Counted from the first letter of the stretch, positions 2,035-52,134 are shown. The stretch: DNA of 64,000 nucleotides from Macrostomum lignano (GCA_002269645.1 NIVC01000854.1:124001-188000), one strand, 5' to 3'. Program-made: numbers and translations. The notes: generated by a model not told the origin, from the sequence alone.

Positions 2035-2563
2035 TAGAGGCCATTATTTCAGCGTGCCGGAAGCGGTCATTATTTCACATTTTTATCACGCCTCAATTGG
2101 CTGTTTTGAGAGTTATTTTACCCATAGACGACTGAGATGTGTGTCTTAGTTTGACCATAGACAACACTGTGATGAGTGCTGATTTCGTTGCGTCTTGCAA
2201 GAAGTCAGGAAAGCGGGTAGTACGAGTACGAGCGTGTAGGGCGTAGGCCGTGCGCTGCACTCTCTGCCCCACATTATTATTCATGACTCATTCTCTCGCC
2301 TAAACTTGTTTACCAATTCTCGACCAATCGCGCATCGCTGCACCCCACCCCACAATATTGACTAATATATAAATATATTGAGTAAACAGAGCCATACAGA
2401 GGCCACCTTTTCGGCACGCAAACCCAGACTTCACAGAACGTAAAAGCTATTTGTCTTGTCAAAAAACTATGGCTGGTGCATCTCGTCAAACGTGCAGCCC
2501 CGCTTATTAATTGGAAGAATCTTCTTGTCGACGACTGAACGAACCGTGCGACCTATGCTTCAG

Positions 2564-2666
2564 GTGGTGGGGGGGCACCCCACTACCGGGCGCGCCTGGC
2601 GCGCCTCCCAACGCTGCCACCTTCTCGCGGTGGGACCGACTGGGCGCCCGCCCAGCAAAGTGCAGC
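2564..2666 (+). ncRNA. HDV-like self-cleaving ribozyme core at the LINE 5' end (5' strand of P1 missing)
   Basis: By-eye fold: P2 GCTGC 2613-17/GCAGC 2662-66; P3 ACC 2619-21/GGT 2629-31; L3 TTCTCGC; P1 3' strand GGGACC 2632-37; P1.1 GA 2638-39 pairing with L3 TC; P4 CTGGGC/GCCCAG; J4/2 CAAA with putative catalytic C2656. Two hairpins occupy J1/2. Confidence 0.65.
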
Positions 2667-5600
2667 AACACCCCGGACCCTGGGAAGAGTGCAGAGCGCG
2701 CTTTCGGCGGGTCAATACCACGTCGGCATTCTTTTACCAAGCTGGCCCTGGCTCCCCAACCCACCTCGGCCAGCTTCTCATCCGGGTTGGAGACATCGAA
2801 CAAAACCCGGGACGAGCCTTCCCGTGCGGAGCCTGCAATCAGAATGTCACCCGCAAAGACTACTCCACCCGCTGCTCCTCTTGCCTTCGCTGGTGGCACC
2901 GCCGTTGCAGCAACCTTAGCATAGCCGAAATCAACAACATCGGTCGTGACCGGAGACCCTGGCGGTGCGCAAACTGCCGTCAGCCGACGGCACAGATGGA
3001 CAGCCCAACGCCGCCGCCTGACCCGCCTAGCCCGCCAAACCCGCCTCCCCCGGTCCACCGTCGGACTGAAAACATGGCCACGTATCCGACCGACGGGACT
3101 CTGCACGCTAAAAACGCTAAAAACAAAGACAATGCAAATTTCCGCATCATACAACTCAATGCAGCCGGCCTCAGAGCTCGACGCCTCGAACTCCTCCGAT
3201 TCCTCGAAGAACACCAAGCGGACATTGCCTGCATCCAGGAATCGAATCTGTCGCCCACGTCTCAGGTCCCGCGCCTCCCCGGTTGGCAACTGGCAGGCCG
3301 TAGGGACCGCGCTATAAACCGCGACGGTGACGCCACTGCCACTCTCCACGGAGGGGTCTGTTTTCTTGTCAAGGAAGGCGTGGATTTCGCTGAGTACCGT
3401 CTGCCGCAGATAGACGTGACCCGCACTGCATCTGAAGGCTCGGCCATCTCGCTCCACGATAAACGGTTACCACGCCCAATTCACATCATCAACCTCTACC
3501 TCCCACCGGTTCGAACCGCCGATGGGCGCCCTGACGGCTTCGACCCGGACTGGCTCCCGACCGGCCCGGACGTGCTCACCCTCGGAGACATCAACGCGCA
3601 CCACGGTGTGTATGTGGGAGGATAACTGCAACTCTGAAGACCAGCGAGGCTCCGTTTTCGAAGACTGGGCTACCACGAACGACTACGTGGCCCTCAACGA
3701 CGGCGGCCCAACCAGAGTCAACGCCAGAGGCATCACCAGCAGCCCCGACGTCTCCTTCGTCCCTGCCAGCTGGCAGGACAAGCTGGAATGGAACACCGGC
3801 AAACATATCGGATCTGATCACCTGCCCATTATCATTGACGTTATTAACCCAAACCCGCTCCCTGTGAAAAACGACAGGAAAAAGAGGCACACTCCCTTGG
3901 CTTATCACAAAGCAGACTGGGACAAATACCGCCTTATCATCAGCGAGCGCATTAAAAACTGGACCGCCAGACCACCAAAGACTGCCACCGGAGCCGCAAA
4001 CAGGCTCACCGACGCGATCATGGACGCGGCCCGCAAAGCGATCCCGCAGGGATCCCGCCGCGCCCCTATCGCCTGGTGGTGCCCAGAAGCAGAAGCAGCG
4101 TGCGCGGCGAGGCGCCAGGCGCTAGAAGACCTCCGAGCCAACCCCAACGACGACCAACTCGCCCAGGCGTTCCAGGAGGTGGCAGCATACGCCACCGCCA
4201 CCATCCGCAACGCAAAGGAAGCCCTGTGGCGCGACTTCATCAGCGACAACTCCAGCGAGCTCAAGTCATCTTCGACGGCTTCCAAGCGCAGAAACCAGCG
4301 AAGCGGACCGCCCTACTCTTAGCTGATTTCTCCAGAGCATACGAGCGAGTGTGGCGTAAAGCCCAAATCGCCAAGCTCCACAGGAAAGGGACGCCCACGT
4401 GCATGGATTAAAAACTTCATCAGCGATCGCCGTGCCCTCGTCACCTGGGACGGGGCCCGCAGTCGCGTCCGGATCTTCACCGAGGGCCTACCGCAAGGAT
4501 CCGTTCTCGCCCCGACGTTTTGGGACGTGTACATCGACGACCTGCTCGACGACGCCCCCGAAAACGTCCTGGCGGTTGGATACACCGACGACACCACCTT
4601 CGGCGCCCAAGGCCACAACCTCAGGGAGTGCGAGTCGAAACTGCAGAGAGCGGCCGATTGGCTTGTTGCCTGGTCCCAAACCTGGAAGGTGGACCTCAAC
4701 AAGTCCAAATCGGTCGTTTCCTTCTTCTCCCTCGACCCCCGCGAGGTCAACGGCAAAGCGAGACCGAAAATTATGCTCGGCGACGTCCAGGCCCCGTACG
4801 AATTCCACCCCAGACTCCTGGGCGTGCACCTCGACTCCCAGCTCACGTTCCGGCACCATGCGTCGGTCCAAAAACAAAACCTCCAAAAGAGGACCAACGC
4901 TCTCCGCTGCCTCGCCGGGCGTGACTGGGGCCAGGACCCAGGGCTCCTGTCGCAACTCTACAGAACCTACGCCGAGTCGGCTGCTCTCCACGGCGCTGCA
5001 GCCTGGTTAAACTTCGCGTCGGACGCCTGCAGACAACTGGTGGAATCTGCTCACAACGAGGCTGCCCGTGTCATCTCAGGGTGCTGCAAATCTACGCCGA
5101 CTGCCGCGCTCCTTATCGAAGCCGTACTCCAACCCCTGGCACACAGTGCGGCGGCCGCGGCAGCGACGCTCCTGGACAAAACGCTTCGCCAACGTCAAGC
5201 CACCCCGCTACGCAACATCGCCGACAGAGAAGTCACTCCTTGCATCCGCGCTCACGGCGGAAACGGCAACTTCCGCAGATGCTGGCGCAGGTGTGCTAGA
5301 GAGCTGACCCACAGAGTCGGACTGGCCGAGCGCCAAATCGAAACCGACAACGAGCTGGTGCCACCGTGGTGTTCCTCGACAAGTTTTCACATCCAAGACT
5401 CCCTCATTACTAAGTGTTCCCGAGACGACCCATCGCATGTCCGCAGGGCCGCGGCGCTGGAGACCCTAGCGTCGCTCCCCCCGCAGACCTGGAACTCTGG
5501 ACGGACGGCTCAGCATCAGGAGGCACTACCAACGGCGGAGCAGGAGCCGTACTCTACACCTGCGGTTCGCCGACGCGCATTTTCAGAGCACCGGCGGGGA

Positions 5601-6372
5601 GCCTGACCTCGTCCTTCCGAGCGGAAGAATGCGCGCTTAGGCTCGGCCTTCAGGCAGCGTTTGACGATCTGCCGTGGCCGGGAAACCGCGAGCTGCGCTG
5701 CGCGACTGACTCCCAGGCCCTGCTCCGCTGCCTCAAAGGCGGCCCCAGCCCGCGGCTTTCCCCGTGCTGCCGCGACATCCTGCGTATTTTGGGACGCCTA
5801 CCGCCAGGCCACCACGTGACCCTGCAATGGGTCCCGGGCCACTGCGACCTTCGTCGCAACGATCTCGCCGACGCCACTGCCCGCGCTGCTGCCACTCTTG
5901 ATCAGACCAACGCACCTCTGGATCACCGCAGCGCGCGCTCTGCCATCCTGGAAACGGCCCACAACGACTTCATCCAATTGTACAAGGCAAACGAGCACTG
6001 CAGCACCCACCGCACCTGCACCAACGGACGACGACCCAAACAGAAAACTTCCATGAACCGTAAGGACAGAGTCCTGCTAGCCCAGCTACGCACTGGCCAC
6101 TGCCCGATACTCCGACAGTACCGACACCGCATCGGGCTGGAACTGGAGGCCACCTGCCCAGCCTGCGGGGAGGCCCCGGAGGACCTCAAACATCTGCTTC
6201 TGGAATGCCGCACCACAACCGAGACCAGACGACAAATCTTGGGCGAGAACCCGACGCTGGCCATCCTCCACGACGACGGCCCGCGCGCACTGCACTTTCT
6301 CCAGGCGGTAGGGGCGCAAACCCACCCCCCGGATATTAACCCGGCCGGGAACTAACAACAACAACAACAACA

Positions 6373-6484
6373 CCCCCTGGGATTTACTCCCAGCCTGCTG
6401 GGTAATCAGCAGGCCCTATCCGGCGCCGCGTCTTTGTCGCGGGGGGGAGGCAACGCCCGTTCTTCGGGCGGCGAAGAGCGCCGG
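6373..6484 (+). ncRNA. Second HDV-like ribozyme, complete, immediately after the LINE (CAA)n tail
   Basis: P1 CCCCC(T) 6373-78/G-run 6441-47; P2 CCGGCGC 6420-26/GCGCCGG 6478-84; P3 GCG 6428-30/CGC 6438-40; L3 TCTTTGT; P1.1 AG 6448-49 pairing with L3 CT; P4 CGCCCG/CGGGCG; J4/2 GCGAA with putative catalytic C6472. Two hairpins in J1/2. Confidence 0.75.
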
Positions 6485-6640
6485 GAATCGGTCACCGCTC
6501 CTGGCTCAGGGGCGGTGGATGTGGCTCGGTCCGGCCCTCTGTGCTCAGCCTTTGTCGCTGGCTCTGTCAGCGGTAGGGGTTTGGTACCTGGTCCGGTTAT
6601 TCCGAGCTCGGTCCGCAGTCAACAACAACAACAACAACAA
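6373..6640 (+). mobile_element. Putative non-autonomous ribozyme-headed short retroelement (SINE/SIDE-like) with a (CAA)7 tail
   Basis: Starts at a predicted ribozyme cleavage point, has a GC-rich hairpin body at 6485-6619, and ends in its own (CAA)7 at 6620-6640 directly before the TSD. Confidence 0.6.
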
Positions 6641-7239
6641 CCTATGCTTCAGTGGAGGTGACACAGGAGATGCGGGTGAAGCATGGTAAGCATAATATGC
6701 CAACATTGTAAGTAAATTAGTGGCTATACTAATAACTATACTCGTATATACACTGTGAATTTTTTACAATGTCCATTAATCTGCAGGTCGGATGGATTCG
6801 GAACGCGCAGTTCGCTTCTTCGAGAATTGCCACTTCAAGGATTGCACCTTTCAGTTTTAATGAGCAACTTCGGATGAACAGTTTACGAGTATGACTACTG
6901 TCACTGTGTTGTTTTTGTGCTTAATGTAGCGCGTTTTCCATTGACAAGCGTTTCGCTGCCCATTAACTGCACTTTGAGATGCGTGTTATTGTCAACATAT
7001 TTGCGTGTTATTGTCCATCGGTATATTTTAAGATAACAGAAAATTAACAAGCATACGAAGGATAACAGGTTTAAAAAAGCAATTTAACGAAATATTTAAC
7101 AAAATATTCAAGATAGCGTCGAATTCCGGCTCAAATACAACCGAGAGTTGCAGGAGCGTAATATTTTCCCTCATTGGTCTTTAATTGGAAATCATATATT
7201 CAAAGGTATTCATTCAGCGTTCTGTCATCCAGCGAGGCA

Positions 7240-9660
7240 TAGTCCGTGCGTAGGCTTCGATTCATACAAAAGTTGAAAAAACGCCTACCGTTCTCCTCCA
7301 TTTGCCGCCTGGTGCTAGCGGGCAGACCTTCAATCTCGATGCCATCTAACTGGAGCAACTCATCACTCAGATCACCGCTATCAGCTAGTTAAAGTTCTTC
7401 GAACTCCTGTAAATCGTCAAGTTGTTCGGTATCCTTCGCCAGGAAGTTCATGAAGTCGTCGATAAGCTCGCTACATTCATCGCCGTTCGAAGACAGTCTC
7501 GTAATGATGTCCAAGTCATTATCAGTGACGCCACTGATCTCATCCGTTGGCAGAGCTTTGTAGTTAAGTAAAGGCGGTGGTAGAAGTCTAGTTGATTTCG
7601 ACATGTCTCGCTTTAAATTAAAAATTTTCTGTATTTAGCATTTGTCTGAGCTTGATATCTCGCCTCAGCTTCGACTCTAATACAAAAACTCTGGCTTTCC
7701 CACAGATACTACGAGAGTATCCGATAGACTATCGCGATCAAAAGAGTATTGAGGTCGCCAATGAATCGGCCGCTGGAAGCCTTTGCCATAGAGATGCGCT
7801 GAGTTCAGCATGTCGAAAATGTCATTCAGACGCTTCGCAAATTCAGCTGTCTGCAACGCATCCTCAGATAATTCATTATGATAGACCAAAATCCTGATAC
7901 CACTTGCAACAGAATGGCTTAACACTTGTGCTGCGAGCGATACTTTCATCTTCTGACCCAGAGCTAAGCTGAAATGAGCGTCGGTGAGCTTGCTTGCTAA
8001 TCGGAGAGATGGGCCGCTGTCGTTCTGATAAAACCGGATGAGATGCTGCCACTTAGCTAGCTTGCACTCGTTGAATTTGATGTCGTTCTGCATCGGGGCG
8101 TTTCTAGCATTTTTAGGCAATGTGGGATGTCCACGATGACGTAGACTGGCTCACCGGTTACAGGGTGACGTAAAAAAGGATTAGCAGAGTCAGCCCGTCT
8201 GGAAAGGTGAGCCCACTGGGTTGACTCTTGATCCGCAACCAGTGCAACGACCTTAATCCCGGCCTTGTGGCTAGCTGTCAGGCACTCATCAATAGCTATC
8301 CCGAATCCTTCTTGGCCAAGAGTTCGAAAAACAGGATAATATGCGTGAAGTGCATGGGAAATGCACTTAATAATTGTAGCCCATACCCGTACTTTGCTAG
8401 TTTCGTCCCCTTTTTATTACGTGCTAACTGTAGTAGTCCCCATTCACTTATGTCTATGACCACGACCTTAAAACCCTTGTATTGCCCCCCCCCCCCGAGC
8501 GCGTCTTCTCTCTAAGTTTTTCTTCGGCCCAAAGCTTTCGTAATCGCATGACAAATAAAAAGCAATATCAGCCATAAGAGATAATCTGCAACAAGACAAA
8601 TACATCAGTTACCAGACACAACAATGCGATTGGTTGTTTCCAGTCCTGAAAGACTCCTCGAAGCACAGCGACGATGGCCTCGTTTACAGGTCTGGGCAAC
8701 TGCTCCTTGCTGTCATCAAGGATGTCAAGGATCGCAGCCCACCACCATGTCACGATGTTGCTTGTAGCGCAGGATGGGTGTGAGACTCATTCCATCGAAG
8801 CAAAGGGTAGCAATCCGCTGCTGATTTGTCGATGATGCAAACTTGGACTGCAAGGATCGCATCGTCAAGTTGCAAATCCCAGGCAATACGAAATACTGTC
8901 GAATTCGCCGCCTAATTGTCGAACTTGATGGTAGCGGAATCTTCCACTTATTGCGGACCAGTCGGTAAGCTGACGAGCCTTTGTGATGCAGCTGAATTGA
9001 GCACGCAATGTCTGCTTTGGTCCAGCGCATGCCGCGACTGCGAACATCACGCCTGACCTTCTGCTGCATCAGACGAGTAGCTATTGAGCTGCTGCTACCC
9101 GACTGGACTGCTTTTGCTTTTTCTATTCGCGCTTGCATCTGTCGGATGGTGGTTTTTTGGCGGCGAACTTTGCTGCGCAGCTGAGCGATGATGTTATTGC
9201 TTCGTTGTTCAGCATGACCTTGGTTGGTTGAGCTTGCCTGCTGCTCTTCGGCCTGTGGCGGCTCACCATCAGTGCTGTTGAATGGCTGCAGTTCAGGTGG
9301 ATAGAGATTGTCAGCCTCTTCGTCACTGCGAACAACCAAATGTGTCAGGTGATGTGCAATGAGGCGGGGCAGAGTCAGCTCCCTGTCTGGAACGGCATTC
9401 CATCGCAAACGTGTGGTATCTCCATGTTGCAGAGAAGGACAGCTGGAATAATTGTCAGTAAAATGCACACTGCACACTCGCAATGCCATCTTGCGAATGG
9501 CTCCGATGTCCAAGTCGATTTCCAGCATTTGCCGCCATTGGTTCGCAACTCCGTCGTCCGCTGGAAACCTGTGCATTCGCACAGCCACTCCCTCGTCCGT
9601 TAGAGATTGCGCTGTATGGGTGCAGGTGGCTGCACAGCAGCGCTTTGAGCTGAATTCCAT
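7240..9660 (-). pseudogene. THAP-domain P-element-family transposase (THAP9-like), frameshifted and partly deleted
   Basis: THAP C2CH from ATG 9660 (RCCAATC...HRFP...W...VCSVHF...AVP). Transposase motifs LPSSSTIRR, LCFDGMSL, RGVFQDWKQPIA, VVALVADQ, HPVTGEPVYVIVDIPHCLKNARN, KMKVSLAAQVLSHSVASG, TAEF..LNDIFDMLNS. The segment carrying the third catalytic residue (NQD.LE) is not seen. No convincing TIR/TSD. Confidence 0.88.
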
Positions 9661-10225
9661 GTCAGTATGGTGATTGCAAGAAGCGTTGCTGGTGTTTTTG
9701 TCGTTCTTGCCCTGCTTGCTGGTAAAGTGCGAAGTAAAATCTTTTCCTTCTCCGTCCTGGCCAATTATTCCTTTAAACTGCGTATCTCGTCCCACTTGAC
9801 TGCTAGCTAAAAACGAAGTCAATCGATTTCTTCGACTGTCTATGGCCAAGACCAACGCCTTTTTGCGGTGGGTGCAGATTTTACTAGTGGTATTTACGCC
9901 TGAGAATTTCGATCCACTGCCAAGCTTGGCCATAGATAAAAGAATTGAAAGCGCCAAGGTTGTGCGTGTGTGACGCGGGCAGCTAGACCATCATTCTCTC
10001 CAAATATTTTGTCAAGACAAAAAATAGAGCAAATATGCACTTATACCACTGGACAGAGAGTAGCAAATCAAACTGACGCATAAAGATAATGCTGAGTGAA
10101 CCATCTACATGTATGGTATTCAGTATCTGTGGGCTTTCCTATTAAAATTAAAATTGTCAATGGCCATAAACTCCCCACCCCTGCAAGAAGTTCTTCCAAG
10201 GCTGCGTGCTATTGTCTCTCCAGAC

Positions 10226-34678: not shown

Positions 34679-36479
34679 GGCCTCAAACCACTTGGAATTA
34701 TAACTCGAATCAGCTTCAAACTCGGTGCACGCCCTCGTCGAGTTTGCGTGCTTTTTTACCAGCCAAATTGAAGCCTTATCGCTCTAAGTCTATGCTGAAA
34801 AAAATTATAACCAACGCTGCCGTCACTGGTTTTGGTAAACTTTTTTACTTTCTGGCATGTTTTTTGGCCTCAACCTTTCTCTTATCGGAAGACTGTGGAG
34901 CGTAGTAGTGACACTACCAGACCCCTCATTTTTTAAGATAGGTGCGCCATTTCATTTCTTTCCAAATTTTTTTCTTCCCAGAAAGTAGTTCTCGAACCTG
35001 AATGAGCACGCTGTTTCGTGGTCGTAAAGGTCTACTGAGCTCGGACATTGATCCTGACACGGTGCTCAAAGCTGAGCGATTATGGTTTCGGCACAATGCA
35101 TGCAGATAGCTTGTCTGCATGACAGTTATAACAGACATTCTGCGCTCTGCGTGTGACTCGCCTTTACACAAAACACATAGCGACGTAACTAAATGACACC
35201 CTAAAGTCCGCGGCGACCTTTAAACAGAGCTTCGAAGGAAGCACACATAAAAAATGAAAAACAGCAACGGTAGCGGTCAGACAGGGCCTCGGAATGCAGG
35301 ACTGTCCTCACAGAACAAAATGTGGCGCAGGTAAGCCCGCGGCCACATTGCCACATCGTTGGTAGAACCAGACCGTCAAGGTAGACGAAACTGCTGACAT
35401 CGAGTAGTTCCATCGCCTGTCGCTTGTCAGAGAATCGCAGTCTCGATACCGTTCGGCACGCAGAGCACGATGGTCTTCCGCGTGTTGATTGATCTACAAG
35501 GCCGAAACTCGCCGCAACAGCAACCAGCGTGTCCAGTTGTCACTGGGAGCGGTGGAGCAAAGCACACTGACCGTCTCTCTGTTTGGCGTCGACCCAGGCG
35601 TCGCCCCAGCAGAAGCCGTCATCGTTGGTAGGAACAACACTGCTCAGCACCCAGCCAACTGCCGGAACAAACAAACACCCCAACGGAGCAAACGTGGCTC
35701 CCAGGAGCACCTTAGAGGATGTTTAAAAGAAGTCTGATTAGGCCGTTGTTGACGCAGCAGCTTTTTGCGTTAAACAGTGCCATTGCAGCCTCAAAAAACG
35801 GTAAAATCCTCAGTAACTAATCAGCGCATCAAGACAGCGTCTCAAGAATACGGTGCATTTAAGGTGCCAAGAAAGAATAAATACATGCACCTCTCTGAAG
35901 TTCTATTAACATTTTTTTCAAACTTATTTTAAACCCTTGTCCAGAAAACCAACAATTGAAATGTTGATGTTTAACTCAGAATTATTCAGCAAGTTTCTAA
36001 CGAAAAAGTGATTAAGCCATAGCCAACGACAAATCCACTATGGAAACGTGGCTTCACAAACCCTCTGCACAAAATAGGAATTGTGCCACGCGCTGCACCA
36101 GGGGATTAAGTGAACTCTGCCTATAATCCTTCAGCTAGAACTAGGCGCAAGAACAGGTTTGCTCACAATGGAATCTCTCAGAGGATCACGATTATGAATA
36201 AAGACAGCAGATGGCTTCTGTCGCTGGCTTAGCTGACGTGGCAAACAGCAGATGTTGCAGCTCTATCTATGATCTGCAGCCAGACTAACCAACAACAACA
36301 AGCAAACAAGTTGAAGAACCAAATCTCGCTTTGAGGACACGTGGCAGAGCTCTGGATTAAGCCACCCGTCTCTCTAACTGTGCATAAAAGCTGCGCCTGA
36401 CTACGCAAATCTGAAGATTCCTCGCTGCGAACTGATTCTACTTGTCCCGATCAACTTCTCAACTAGCATTGCAGTAGCC

Positions 36480-37196
36480 ATGGCAAAGTTCTGCGACGCC
36501 CTCTTCGCCCTGATTCTGGTGACTTTTGCTGCCGCCGTTGCCGCCTCTGTCTCCTCTGAAGATTCCGACGAGGTTGCCAAGCCGAAGTACACGGTCACCG
36601 AGGAGGTCTGGTTCGAGATCGAGATCAAAGACCTCGACGGGCCCGGCGACGACTTTACCGGCCGGTTCACCGTCGCCGTGTTCGGCGAGGACGCCCCCGC
36701 TACGTCGATGAACTTCGCGTCCCTGGCCCGCGGCTGGAAGTCCGCCAAAGGCGACGTGCTGCACTACAAGAACACCCCGGTGCATCGCGTTGTGCCGGAC
36801 TTCGTCGTTCAGATGGGCGACGTGGTGCGCAAGGACGGCACCGGCGGAGCCAGCATCTTCGGCAAGGCATTCAACGATGAGCCCTTCATCCTGTCGCACC
36901 GCAGCGCCGGCTGGGTTGCCATGGCCAACCACGGCCCGGACACCAACGGCTCGCAGTTCTACATCACCCTGACCAAAGCTCGCTGGCTCGACAAGCATCA
37001 CGTAGTGTTCGGCAAAGTCGTCCGCGGCTTCGACGTGGTCAACACGATCGGCGAGGTGCCAACGAATCCGTCAAATGCGCAGCCGAAGAAGCGAGTCCGC
37101 ATCATGGACTGCGGCGTGGTCGGCATCAAGAAGCCGTACACGCTGAGCAAATCCGACCTTGACTCGACGGCCGATCTGGTCAAGTCCGAGCTGTGA
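36480..37196 (+). CDS. PPIB: Cyclophilin B (ER peptidyl-prolyl cis-trans isomerase), intronless, 238 aa
   Basis: N-terminal signal peptide. Motifs VTEEVWFEI, YKNTPVHRVVPDFVVQMGD, GTGGASIFG..FNDE, MANHGPDTNGSQFYIT, WLDKHHVVFGKV. C-terminal KSEL. AATAAA at ~37315. Confidence 0.96.
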   Translation: MAKFCDALFALILVTFAAAVAASVSSEDSDEVAKPKYTVTEEVWFEIEIKDLDGPGDDFTGRFTVAVFGEDAPATSMNFASLARGWKSAKGDVLHYKNTPVHRVVPDFVVQMGDVVRKDGTGGASIFGKAFNDEPFILSHRSAGWVAMANHGPDTNGSQFYITLTKARWLDKHHVVFGKVVRGFDVVNTIGEVPTNPSNAQPKKRVRIMDCGVVGIKKPYTLSKSDLDSTADLVKSEL

Positions 37197-49749: not shown

Positions 49750-52134
49750 ATGGAGCGGGAATACCCGAAAAGAAAATCGTCAACGCACCCGGACAGAGTC
49801 GGTAAGAGGCGTCGATACAAGCGACTGCTATTTAAGAATGGCGACATGAACATAACGCAGTGCTCGGTGAAAGACAGGCGGAGGCGCTATCTAGCCGACA
49901 TATTCACGACGCTAATTGATTCAAAATGGACTTACGCCGTTTTGTTATTTGTTGCTGTTTTCGTTCTCAGCTGGTTAATTGGCGGCCTAATTTGGCTATT
50001 GGTGGCCTTCAGCCGACAGGACACGATCCCAGAAAAAGCTGACTCTGCTCGCTGCGTCTACGGAGTGAGTAGCTTTATAACTGCGTTTCAGTTCTCCTTG
50101 GAAACTCAGCACACCATCGGTTACGGTACGCCTCGAACGGCGAATTCTTTTTGCCCAGAGGTGGTACTGTTTGTTATGCTGCAGTCGGTTGTCGGCGTGC
50201 TCATACAGGTGAGTGACAGCCTGTTAATTGCTTTCGTACTCTGTTTATCTGTTTGACAAAAAGCTGGTTTGATTTCAAACTTCGAGAAAAAGTCCGTGCG
50301 CTACTGCGCCACGTGTTGCCACTTGCCAGCTGCCCCAGCTTCACAAGCAATTAAAGTGCATGCTATAGTTTCTCCCTGTTTTGCTATTTGCAGTCAGCAT
50401 ACTGTACTTAAAGTAGCCCAATTTTAAGTCTAAATCTACTTTAGCCTTTATTATTCAGTAGTAGCAAAAGATTGGGTATATGAATATTTAGCATAACGAA
50501 ACGTGTGTGTGTGTGTGTGTCACATGATGCAGACAGTGTGTCACATGATGCAGGCAGTGTTTGTGTCACATGATGCAGGCAGTGTTTGTGTCACATGATG
50601 CAGGCAGTGTTTGTGTCACATGATGCAGGCAGTGTGTGTCACATGATGCAGACAGTGTGTGTGTCACTTGATGCAGGCAGTGTGTGTCACATGATGGAGG
50701 CAGTGTGTCTCACATGATGCAGGCAGTGTGTGTCACATGATCAGGCAGTGTGTGTCACATGATGGAGGCAGTGTGTCTCACATGATGCAGGCAGTGTGTG
50801 TCACATAATGCAGACAGTGTGTGTGTCAAGAGACAGGGGCGCCCACCTAAGAGTTCGGAGCGCCCACCTAAGAGACAGGAGCGCCAGCCTAAGAGACAGG
50901 GGCGCCAGCCTAAGAGACAGGGGAGCCAGCCTAAGAGACAGGGGCGCCAGCCTAAGAGACGGGGGCGGCAGCCTAAGAGACAGGGGCGCCAGCCTAAGAG
51001 ACAGGGGCGCCAGCCTAAGAGACAAGGGCGCTAGCCTAAGAGACAGGGGCGCCAGCCTAAGAGACAGGGGCGCCAGCCTAAGAGACAGGGGCGCCAGCCT
51101 AAGAGACAGGGGCGCCAGCCTAAGAGACAGGGGCGCCAGCCTAAGAGACAGGGGTGCCAGCCTAAGAGACAGGGGCGCCAGCCTAAGAGACAGGGGCGCC
51201 AGCCTAAGAGACAGGAGCGCCAGCCTAAAAGACAGGGGCGCCAGCCTAAGAGACAGGGGCGCCAGCCTAAGAGACAGGGGCGCCAGCCTAAAAGACAGGG
51301 GCGCCAGCCTAAGAGACAGGGGCGCCAGCCTACTCGTAAGAAACAGGGGAACTGAATTAATTGATTCAACTGAATGCTGAGTCCGAACTCCGGAAAGCTT
51401 AATTCAGCTGACTGGCTCCTCAAAAACCCGCACCCATGCAGGCCTTCATGACGGGGTTCATATTCTCAAAGCTGACTCTACCCGGCAAGCGAGCTGGCGC
51501 CATCATGTTCAGCCGAGAGGCCCTAGTTACTAAGCGAGACGACCAAATGGTGCTGCTAATTCGGGTTGGCGACATGCGCCGGTCCCAGCTGATGGAGGCC
51601 AGCATCAAGGGCACTTTAGTACGAAAGCGAATCACTAGGGAAAACGAGATATTGCCGTTGGAACAATTCCGAGTCGATTTCGGCGCCTCCACAGGTAGAG
51701 ACCGCCTGTTCCTGCCGTTCCCAGCCATTGTGGAGCATCGAATCGATGAGAAATCCCCGTTTTGGGATATCTCAGCCGACGACCTTCAGCACGAGCAGTT
51801 CGAGCTGGTAGTGGCTCTGGCCGGCGTGGCGGAGTCGACCGGAAGCACAGCGGAAGCTCGCACCTCCTACCTGCCCTCGGAGATTCGTTGGGGCTACAAT
51901 TTCGAACGATTAGTAACCTATCAGAAAGAAAACGGTCGCTACCAGATCGATTTTAACAAATTCAATTCCACCCGCCCGACGCCTCTGTTTCCTAGAATGT
52001 CGGCCAGGCAGATGGCCGGCCTGTGCGAGGCCAATCTGAGACTCTTTGATGCGCCAGCCGCAGCCGGCTCTCGCATATCGGCTATTGATGAAACTCAAAC
52101 AGTCAATCCCGAAGAGATGGACACCCATCTCTGA
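49750..52134 (+). CDS. Inward-rectifier potassium channel (Kir family), 2 exons, ~383 aa
   Basis: Exons 49750-50208 and 51442-52134 (CAG|GTGAGT ... CAG|GCC), in frame. Motifs KNGDMNI, YLADIFTTLIDSKW, AFQFSLETQHTIGYG, CPE, IMFSREALV, IRVGDMRRSQLMEA, EHRIDEKSPF, ARTSYLPSEIRWG. Confidence 0.95.
50505..51335. repeat. Two abutting minisatellites in the Kir intron: ~21-23-bp GTGTCACATGATGCAGGCAGT and 21-bp AAGAGACAGGGGCGCCAGCCT
   Basis: First array ~50505-50825, second ~50830-51335. Confidence 0.95.

What the first reader, a model, noticed from the sequence alone, without database searches (positions are those of the whole stretch)
6353..6652. Second HDV-like ribozyme heading a short (CAA)n-tailed unit, fused behind the LINE tail inside one TSD
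Seen: the LINE stop codon is followed by (CAA)5. At the next base a sequence begins that satisfies all HDV/CPEB3-type pairings by eye: P1 CCCCC/G-run, P2 CCGGCGC/GCGCCGG, P3 GCG/CGC around L3 TCTTTGT, P1.1 AG, P4 CGCCCG/CGGGCG, J4/2 GCGAA. About 135 nt of further hairpins follow, then a second (CAA)7, then the TSD. Known: L1Tc/ingi, R2 and RTE elements use 5' HDV-like ribozymes, and R2 has ribozyme-headed SIDEs. Inference: either (a) a ribozyme-headed non-autonomous retroelement parasitising this LINE, co-inserted by an RT template jump from its cleaved 5' end onto the LINE 3' tail, or (b) a LINE that uses a 3' ribozyme to cut its RNA precisely after the (CAA)n tail.
Basis: partly seen in the sequence, partly recalled or inferred. 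Interest (0 to 1): 0.88.

Follow-up and report, generated by a model that had tools for sequence, protein, structure and literature searches.

The report
Ribozyme-headed mini-retroelement behind a LINE
A 268-base tailed unit whose first 113 bases fold like an HDV-type self-cleaving ribozyme sits directly behind a decayed LINE inside one target-site duplication; it looks like a new example of the known ribozyme-headed parasites of LINEs, not a new kind of 3' processing signal.

Summary
One 13-bp TSD (ACCTATGCTTCAG, 2553-2565 and 6641-6653) brackets a frameshifted LINE (2566-6372: 2A-like motif, PHD, APE, RT, RNase H, zinc finger; TAA, then (CAA)5CA) plus a 268-bp unit (6373-6640) ending in (CAA)7.

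Bases 6373-6485 satisfy every HDV-like pairing. This is the only hit of a strict descriptor in the 64-kb window, and GC-rich hits are rare in shuffles. Rfam gives only a sub-threshold match (RF02682, 29.5 bits against a cut-off of 44).

In related LINEs from public contigs, a ribozyme that directly follows a (CAA)n tail is always the 5' head of the next element. One contig carries three LINEs head-to-tail inside a single TSD. More than 20 other relatives end in a tail followed by ordinary flank.

Reading (a) is therefore favoured: a ribozyme-headed, non-coding, SIDE/NARTc-like element joined to the LINE tail, probably by an RT template jump. The joining mechanism is not proven. Reading (b), a 3' ribozyme belonging to the LINE, is not supported.

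Limits: only one copy of the unit could be found, so there is no covariation test and no cleavage data. A model built from the relatives' ribozymes does not detect it.

Novelty: new member of a known kind. Interest is moderate.

The parts
2553..2565 (+). Left copy of the 13-bp target-site duplication ACCTATGCTTCAG
   Evidence: Exact repeat of 6641-6653.
2566..6372 (+). Decayed full-length LINE. It carries a 5' ribozyme relic, a 2A-like GDIEQNPG motif at 2792-2815, PHD, APE, RT, RNase H and a zinc finger. Its stop is TAA at 6353-6355 and its tail is (CAA)5CA at 6356-6372. At least 4 frameshifts.
   Evidence: Pfam hits; tblastn against the L003 LINE shows frame changes near 3612, 4250-4320, 4390 and 5370-5490; 2A motif.
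2566..2668 (+). The LINE's own degenerate 5' HDV-like ribozyme. P1 is GUGGUGG with GGACCGA (only 4 of 7 pairs), J1/2 is about 42 nt, P2 is GCUGC with GCAGC, P3 is CACC with GGUG, L3 is UUCUCGC, P4 is CUGGG with CCCAG, and J4/2 is CAAAGU.
   Evidence: Read by eye and by homology to the L039/L038 ribozymes. There is a weak, non-significant hit of model R2 at 2612-2667 (8.6 bits, E 4.7). It fails the strict descriptor.
6373..6485 (+). HDV-like ribozyme candidate heading the short unit. Predicted cleavage is between A6372 and C6373; the candidate catalytic base is C6472.
6378..6414 (+). Two hairpins inside J1/2 (6378-6392 and 6393-6414), resembling the P1.2 peripheral domain.
   Evidence: MFE fold. 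A J1/2 helix is a known activating feature of large HDV-like ribozymes (PMC4908430).
6486..6619 (+). Structured, non-coding 3' domain of the unit. It contains GCGGTAGGGG (6570-6579) and CCGGTTATT (6593-6601), which lie at nearly the same distance from the tail as GCGGTAGGGG (6305-6314) and CCGGATATT (6328-6336) in the LINE.
   Evidence: Fold z = -4.2. The tail-anchored 10-mer match is reached in 14 of 20000 shuffles and in 0 of 3665 LINE-body 60-mers; this is a post hoc test.
6620..6640 (+). Second tail, (CAA)7
6641..6653 (+). Right copy of the TSD ACCTATGCTTCAG

Best explanation
Bases 6373-6640 are a separate, short, non-coding retroelement of the SIDE/NARTc type. Its first 113 nt form an HDV-like self-cleaving ribozyme with a structured J1/2 insert. 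Its 3' end carries the same (CAA)n tail as the LINE and perhaps a short LINE-like recognition motif, so the LINE's reverse transcriptase could copy it.

Inferred function: when the unit is transcribed as part of a longer RNA, the ribozyme cuts just 5' of C6373 and releases the unit with a defined 5' end. As a by-product, any upstream LINE RNA is trimmed to ...(CAA)nCA.

Inferred origin of the arrangement: one integration event. Reverse transcription started on the unit's tail at the nicked target and ran to the ribozyme-made 5' end. The enzyme then jumped onto the 3' tail of a LINE RNA and copied it to its own ribozyme-defined 5' end (G2566).

Shown: the anatomy, the single TSD, and the fold's compliance with the HDV-like motif. 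Inferred: cleavage activity, mobilisation by this LINE, and the template jump.
For: Fold:
- All HDV-like helices and the J4/2 C-G-A-A are present.
- It is the only strict-descriptor hit in the window and such hits are rare in shuffles.
- The MFE fold recovers the nested helices.
- RF02682 aligns to the conserved core at 29.5 bits.
- The predicted cleavage site coincides with the tail/unit boundary.

Precedents from papers:
- L1Tc and NARTc begin CCCTG/CCCCTG and cleave at +1, so a C at +1 is known (PMC3185411).
- Long or structured J1/2 regions are known (PMC3774820; PMC4908430).

Relatives:
- L003 carries a 5'-truncated LINE plus two full-length LINEs of different subfamilies, head-to-tail inside one TSD (CAACATCGAACACCA). 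Each internal member starts with a canonical HDV-like ribozyme right after (CAA)n-CA.
- L038 shows LINE-B's ribozyme head directly after LINE-A's tail.
- Five relatives' ribozymes give 100% paired cells and 7 of 12 pairs with compensatory changes.
- The outer target sites (window, L003, L039, L004, L001) are not (CAA)n arrays. Repeated chance landing inside 15-27-bp tails is therefore unlikely.
- All three internal members are full-length to the +1 base, while a 5'-most member is truncated. A jump from a template's 5' end predicts this pattern.

3' end: the unit has the same tail as the LINE, plus a 10-mer at the same offset from it.
Against: - Only one copy of the unit exists in the window. 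None was found in the fetched loci or public collections. There is therefore no covariation, no copy number and no standalone copy with its own TSD.
- The Rfam score is below every family threshold.
- A covariance model built from the relatives' LINE ribozymes does not detect the unit.
- The unit shares no detectable sequence with this LINE's 5' end, unlike NARTc or the R2 SIDEs.
- The cleavage-site pair is C-G rather than the usual G-U.
- P1's G-run could also pair with CUCCC at 6387-6391.
- The 3'-end similarity is weak in a global alignment (p about 0.017) and was noticed post hoc.
- A single TSD is equally expected from later insertion into the tail.
Confidence: 0.6

Rival explanations
1. 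Two separate events. The LINE inserted first and made the TSD. Later the ribozyme-headed unit inserted into the LINE's (CAA)n tail, because its own tail anneals to the (TTG)n strand at a nick. The outer TSD is untouched and the tail is split into (CAA)5 and (CAA)7.
For: The anatomy is identical to the single-event model. Microhomology between tail and target is visible at the outer junctions: AC in the window and CAACA in L003. Relatives of this group insert in or next to microsatellites: L039 and L004 lie at (TAC)n.
Against: None of five outer target sites is a (CAA)n array. Both kilobase-long internal LINEs of L003 are full-length to the base, which independent insertions rarely are. All three tail-to-head junctions have the same ...CAACA phase.
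Confidence: 0.17
2. The composite is the mobile unit. A parent locus already carried LINE plus unit, the ribozyme is slow or dead, and an uncleaved read-through RNA was copied from the second tail. This amounts to a 3' transduction of a neighbouring element.
For: A single TSD brackets both parts. LINE 3' transduction is a well-known process (own knowledge).
Against: It only moves the joining event back one generation. The ribozyme helices carry no mismatch. In L003 the array members are different subfamilies at 49-55% amino-acid identity, so arrays are assembled, not merely copied.
Confidence: 0.12
3. Reading (b): the segment is the LINE's own 3' UTR, and its ribozyme trims read-through RNA just after the first (CAA)n.
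For: Cleavage at 6372/6373 would leave a LINE RNA ending precisely in the tail. PMC3185411 suggests that ribozymes keep tandem L1Tc/NARTc transcripts monocistronic.
Against: The ribozyme stays on the downstream fragment, so copies made from the cleaved RNA would lose it. L001, L002, L004, L039, L003-LINE2 and about 20 metagenomic relatives end in a tail followed by ordinary flank. Wherever a ribozyme follows a tail, it heads another LINE.
Confidence: 0.05
4. Chance. A GC-rich, hairpin-rich stretch of unrelated DNA happens to satisfy a permissive double-pseudoknot pattern.
For: The Rfam score is sub-threshold. A relaxed descriptor gives many spurious solutions in GC-rich sequence. There is no covariation data.
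Against: The strict descriptor gives 0.075 GC-rich hits per shuffled window and none with 26 bp. The conserved single-stranded letters also match: L3 U...G, AGGCAAC, GCGAAG. The fold starts exactly at the tail boundary and is followed by a second identical tail.
Confidence: 0.06

Closest known systems
NARTc / RIME / SIDER, the short non-autonomous partners of L1Tc/ingi LINEs in trypanosomatids
   Same: A unit of about 260 bp with no coding capacity, headed by an HDV-like ribozyme that cleaves at its +1 base (a C). The partner LINE has a single ORF with an N-terminal 2A, APE, RT, RNase H and a zinc finger. Tandem L1Tc/NARTc arrangements are reported (PMC3185411, PMC3383444, PMC4035085).
   Different: NARTc shares its 77-nt ribozyme almost identically with L1Tc and has a poly(A) tail. 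Here the unit's ribozyme is unrelated in sequence to the LINE's, it has a 41-nt structured J1/2, the tail is (CAA)n, and the host appears to be an animal (Kir channel exon).
R2 SIDEs and R2/R1 hybrid SIDEs of Drosophila (PMC3414825)
   Same: A 5' HDV-like ribozyme is fused to a LINE 3' end, the J1/2 is large and variable, there is no ORF, and template jumps by the RT are documented in vivo. The hybrid SIDEs combine a ribozyme of one lineage with the 3' end of another LINE, as may be the case here.
   Different: SIDEs sit at fixed rDNA sites and are cut out of 28S co-transcripts. Here the insertion site is not specific, and the upstream RNA would be a LINE.
5' HDV-like ribozymes of LINEs (R2, R4, Dong, Baggins, RTE, L1Tc) and the drz-Agam-2 class with a P1.2 helix
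   Same: A nested double pseudoknot at the element's first base, and a helix in J1/2 (PMC3774820, PMC4908430).
   Different: No Rfam family threshold is reached. The pair at the cleavage site is C-G.
Chimeric retrocopies made by RT template switching (L1-U6 chimeras; R2 with snU12 or tRNA at its 5' end)
   Same: Two RNAs are copied end to end in one TPRT event and bracketed by one TSD (PMC3414825; L1 chimeras from own knowledge).
   Different: Here, and in L003, both partners are retroelements whose joined ends are a ribozyme-made 5' end and a microsatellite tail.

Membership tests
HDV-like self-cleaving ribozyme | P1 helix of 6-7 bp starting at the cleavage site | tested here: met
   CCCCCU 6373-6378 pairs with GGGGGG 6442-6447. 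An alternative 5' strand, CUCCC 6387-6391, is possible.
HDV-like self-cleaving ribozyme | P2 pseudoknot helix closing the fold | tested here: met
   6420-6426 pairs with 6478-6484: 7 Watson-Crick pairs plus one G-U.
HDV-like self-cleaving ribozyme | Short P3 with a 7-8 nt L3 carrying the U...G pair | tested here: met
   P3 is 3-4 bp. L3 is UCUUUGU, with U at position 1 and G at position 6 (feature described in PMC3774820).
HDV-like self-cleaving ribozyme | Two-pair P1.1 between L3 and the bases after P1 | tested here: met
   A6448-U6433 and G6449-C6432.
HDV-like self-cleaving ribozyme | P4 hairpin followed by J4/2 with the catalytic C (C-G-A-A) | tested here: met
   P4 is 6454-6470. J4/2 is GCGAAGA with C6472.
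HDV-like self-cleaving ribozyme | G-U wobble at the cleavage-site base pair | tested here: not met
   The pair is C6373-G6447. L1Tc and NARTc, which also start with C, cleave at +1 (PMC3185411), so this is not disqualifying.
HDV-like self-cleaving ribozyme | Score above the curated threshold of an Rfam HDV-type model | tested here: not met
   RF02682 scores 29.5 bits against a cut-off of 44; other HDV-type models give no hit. The same library also misses the canonical L003 ribozymes, so its sensitivity is low.
HDV-like self-cleaving ribozyme | Compensatory changes among homologous copies | not testable with these tools
   Only one copy of the unit was found. Covariation was shown only for the relatives' LINE ribozymes.
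HDV-like self-cleaving ribozyme | Site-specific self-cleavage leaving a 5'-OH, abolished by mutating the catalytic C | not testable with these tools
   This needs an in vitro transcription and cleavage assay.
Ribozyme-headed non-autonomous retroelement (SIDE / NARTc type) | 5' ribozyme homologous to that of the autonomous partner | tested here: not met
   There is no similarity to the LINE 5' end. Model R2, built from the relatives' LINE ribozymes, gives no hit at 6373-6485. Hybrid SIDEs show that this feature is not obligatory.
Ribozyme-headed non-autonomous retroelement (SIDE / NARTc type) | 3' end and tail shared with the partner LINE | tested here: inconclusive
   The (CAA)n tail is the same. 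GCGGTAGGGG and CCGGWTATT lie at matching offsets from the tail (p about 7e-4, post hoc). The global alignment is only marginal.
Ribozyme-headed non-autonomous retroelement (SIDE / NARTc type) | Short, with no coding capacity and no pol III (tRNA/5S/7SL) head | tested here: met
   The unit is 247 nt plus tail. Two of its three reading frames carry no stop codon, as is common in GC-rich sequence, but they show no 2A motif and no similarity to the LINE protein beyond the 10-nt 3' motif. Rfam finds no tRNA, 5S or 7SL match in 6300-6700.
Ribozyme-headed non-autonomous retroelement (SIDE / NARTc type) | Many dispersed copies with their own TSDs | not testable with these tools
   The source genome is not available. 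There is no second copy in the window or in the collections.
L1Tc/ingi-like LINE (the partner element) | Single ORF with N-terminal 2A, APE, RT, RNase H and a C-terminal zinc finger, plus a 5' HDV-like ribozyme | tested here: inconclusive
   The domains are present, but the ORF is frameshifted and no phylogeny was made. The 5' ribozyme is degenerate in this copy. It is canonical in the relatives.

The most novel reading that the evidence does not exclude
In this animal LINE group, retroelements travel as 'trains'. The reverse transcriptase jumps from the ribozyme-made 5' end of one RNA onto the (CAA)n 3' end of the next, so several elements (LINEs and short parasites) are laid down in one integration inside one TSD. 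When such a train is transcribed, each member's 5' ribozyme both frees its own 5' end and defines the 3' end (...CAACA) of the member upstream. The LINE and its parasite would thus share a polycistronic, ribozyme-resolved life cycle.
Probability: 0.3. Interest if true: 0.7.

Novelty: new member of a known kind. Interest (0 to 1): 0.5.

Why it matters
If confirmed, the L1Tc/NARTc strategy is not confined to trypanosomes. That strategy combines a 2A-bearing single-ORF LINE, a 5' HDV-like ribozyme and a short ribozyme-headed parasite. Here it would occur in an animal genome, in LINEs with microsatellite tails.

It also gives clean natural examples of multi-element cDNAs inside a single TSD: this window, and the three-LINE array in L003. 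These can test how often LINE reverse transcriptases jump between templates in vivo, and whether ribozyme-made RNA ends favour such jumps.

That question is of practical interest for R2-type insertion tools, which already use ribozyme-defined RNA ends.

Tried and rejected
- Rfam at gathering thresholds on the whole window gave nothing.
- Rfam in E-value mode on the LINE 5' end and on four related loci gave no HDV-type hit, even for the canonical L003 ribozymes.
- My first descriptor missed the site because it forced a 3-bp P3. A relaxed descriptor was too noisy to be useful.
- blastn of the unit and of the LINE against the window found no other copy.
- A protein search with the LINE N-terminal part gave no hits.
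The 5-sequence alignment gave 33 metagenomic relatives, none with a ribozyme after the tail.
- Covariance models R1 and R2, built from the relatives' ribozymes, find the L038 ribozymes (22-23 bits). In the window they find neither the unit nor, significantly, the LINE 5' end.
- blastn and nhmmer of the unit against all fetched loci found nothing.
- An exact-pattern scan of the ribozyme core in genome contigs and viral contigs found nothing.
- The idea that the unit is an internally deleted copy of this LINE's 5' leader was rejected. There is no similarity, no 2A motif and no GGCATTYTTTT leader motif.
- A tRNA, 5S or 7SL SINE head was rejected.

Full report
**What is there**

Bases 2566-6640 are one insertion flanked by an exact 13-bp direct repeat, ACCTATGCTTCAG (2553-2565 and 6641-6653). 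It has two parts.

The first part (2566-6372) is a LINE.
- It has a 2A-like motif (GDIEQNPG, 2792-2815), a PHD finger, an APE endonuclease, a reverse transcriptase, RNase H and a zinc finger.
- The reading frame changes at least four times, near 3612, 4250-4320, 4390 and 5370-5490. It is an old, dead copy.
- The stop codon TAA (6353-6355) is followed directly by (CAA)5CA.

The second part (6373-6640) is 268 bp. It shows no similarity to the LINE protein and ends in (CAA)7. Neither part has a second copy in the window.

**The ribozyme call**

- P1 is CCCCCU with GGGGGG.
- J1/2 is 41 nt and holds two good hairpins.
- P2 is 7-8 bp.
- P3 is CGCG with CGCG around the L3 loop UCUUUGU.
- P1.1 has two pairs (AG with CU).
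- J1/4 is GCAA.
- P4 is 6 bp.
- J4/2 is GCGAAGA, with C6472 as the candidate catalytic base.

A strict descriptor written here finds this site and nothing else in 128 kb (both strands). Shuffled windows give about one hit each, almost all AT-rich. GC-rich hits average 0.075 per window and none has 26 bp. Local shuffles hit 0.15% of the time. The descriptor was adjusted after seeing the site, so these numbers flatter it somewhat.

Independent of any descriptor, the ordinary minimum-free-energy fold recovers P1, both J1/2 hairpins and P3, and the centroid structure also shows P4 (z = -4.55).

Rfam reports nothing at curated thresholds. In permissive mode, the bacterial HDV-like model RF02682 aligns to the conserved core (UCU..GU, AGGCAACG, GGC.AAGA) at 29.5 bits against a cut-off of 44. 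The same library also misses the textbook-like ribozymes of L003, so a sub-threshold score says little.

Two departures from the classical motif have precedents.
- A C at +1 occurs in L1Tc and NARTc, which start CCCTG/CCCCTG and cleave at +1 (PMC3185411).
- Long or helical J1/2 regions occur in R2 ribozymes (up to 498 nt; PMC3774820). In the drz-Agam-2 class, the J1/2 helix accelerates cleavage (PMC4908430).

**What relatives show**

The closest proteins in the public collection are only about 39% identical, so the source species is not represented.

*L003.* This ENA long-read contig holds three LINEs head-to-tail.
- A 245-bp 5'-truncated copy comes first, followed by two full-length copies that are 49-55% identical in protein.
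- All three lie inside one TSD, CAACATCGAACACCA (3841 and 13491).
- Each full-length member begins, right after the preceding (CAA)n-CA, with a canonical HDV-like ribozyme. One has a G-U at the cleavage site. The helices differ between the two copies but always pair.

*L038.* One LINE's ribozyme head follows another LINE's tail.

*L039.* A solitary LINE starts with a ribozyme directly at its junction with a (TAC)n target.

*Models built from relatives.* A covariance model built from three of these ribozymes finds the two L038 ribozymes. On the five sequences, all cells pair and 7 of 12 pairs show compensatory changes.

*Other relatives.* More than 20 others end in a microsatellite tail followed by ordinary flank, with no ribozyme.

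So in this LINE group a ribozyme after a tail is the head of the next retroelement. It is not a 3' appendage of the LINE.

**The window LINE's own 5' end**

The LINE begins GUGGUGG, like the P1 strand GUGGUGC of L039. It also carries a recognisable core: P2 GCUGC with GCAGC, P3 CACC with GGUG, L3 UUCUCGC (identical to L038), P4 CUGGG with CCCAG, and J4/2 CAAAGU.

However, P1 keeps only 4 of 7 pairs. The site fails the strict descriptor and scores an insignificant 8.6 bits with model R2. I read it as a decayed ribozyme.

Both members of the composite therefore appear to start at a ribozyme +1 base.

**What the unit is**

- It has no pol III-type head.
- It has no similarity to the LINE 5' leader.
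- It has no homologue in any fetched locus or scanned collection.
- Model R2 does not detect its ribozyme, so it is not a recent internal-deletion derivative of this LINE.
- Its 3' end has the same tail as the LINE. It shares GCGGTAGGGG 40-41 nt before the tail and CCGGWTATT 18-19 nt before the tail. A tail-anchored 10-mer match is reached in 14 of 20000 shuffles and in 0 of 3665 LINE-body 60-mers. The test is post hoc, and the global alignment is only marginal.

This is the logic of a SIDE or SINE: its own head plus the partner's 3' end. The closest analogues are the R2/R1 hybrid SIDEs and NARTc.

**How the pair arose**

A single TSD fits three routes.
- An end-to-end template jump within one TPRT event.
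- A later insertion of the unit into the LINE's tail.
- Copying of an uncleaved composite RNA.

I favour the jump for three reasons.
- The outer targets of five independent insertions are not (CAA)n tracts.
- All three internal members seen (two multi-kilobase LINEs in L003 and the unit here) are complete to the +1 base, while a 5'-most member is truncated.
- All three internal junctions share the ...CAACA phase.

The sample is tiny, so this remains an inference.

**Reading (b)**

This reading fails on logic and on comparison. Cleavage leaves the ribozyme on the downstream fragment, so a LINE RNA trimmed this way cannot pass the ribozyme on. Relatives also lack it.

Trimming of the upstream LINE RNA would still be a real side effect in any co-transcript. 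This is the seed of the more novel 'train' reading.

**Verdict**

Activity and family status are untested.

Noticed in passing
window 2566-2668: The LINE's own 5' end looks like a decayed HDV-like ribozyme. Its L3 (UUCUCGC) is identical to that of L038 and its first bases (GUGGUGG) resemble the P1 of L039, but only 4 of 7 P1 pairs survive and J1/2 is about 42 nt. It fails the strict descriptor and scores 8.6 bits with model R2.
   Followed up: partly
window 2792-2818: The 2A-like motif GDIEQNPG is followed by Arg instead of the obligatory Pro. Relatives have GDVEKNPGP, IDVEANPGP, GDVEQNPGP and similar. This is probably a decay mutation in this copy.
   Followed up: partly
window 2456-2565: The LINE reading frame stays open upstream through the TSD, and an ATG inside the TSD (2557-2559) is in frame with it. 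It could be chance, or a host-supplied start codon for this copy.
   Followed up: no
L003 3841-13505: Three LINEs are arranged head-to-tail: one 5'-truncated and two full-length copies of different subfamilies. They are separated only by (CAA)n and bracketed by a single TSD, CAACATCGAACACCA.
   Followed up: yes
L038 8527-9258: A 243-aa ORF with a PHD-like zinc finger and a coiled-coil region ends in a (CAG/CAA)n stretch that abuts the ribozyme head of LINE-A. It may be an ORF1-like gene, another element in the train, or a host exon.
   Followed up: no
L039 9640-9822 and 14425-14470; L004 8622-8675: Related LINEs with (CAA)n tails sit in or next to long (TAC)n microsatellites, which hints at a target preference unrelated to their own tail.
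   Followed up: no
window 10600-63400: The window is packed with dozens of minisatellite and microsatellite arrays with periods of 2-240 bp, some longer than 1 kb. Between them lie transposon fragments: a THAP-type transposase (8725-9957, minus strand) and LTR-retrotransposon RT and integrase (59113-61231).
   Followed up: partly
window 36480-37196 and 51436-52134: There is an uninterrupted cyclophilin ORF of 238 aa, possibly a retrocopy, with a (CAA)4 run about 180 bp upstream at 36290-36301. There is also an exon encoding the C-terminal domain of an inward-rectifier K+ channel, which points to an animal genome.
   Followed up: no
window 6526-6533 and 6608-6615: CGGTCC occurs twice in the unit. 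It is the exact complement of the LINE ribozyme's P1 3' strand, GGACCG (2635-2640). In a unit-then-LINE arrangement it could supply a P1 strand. It may well be chance.
   Followed up: no
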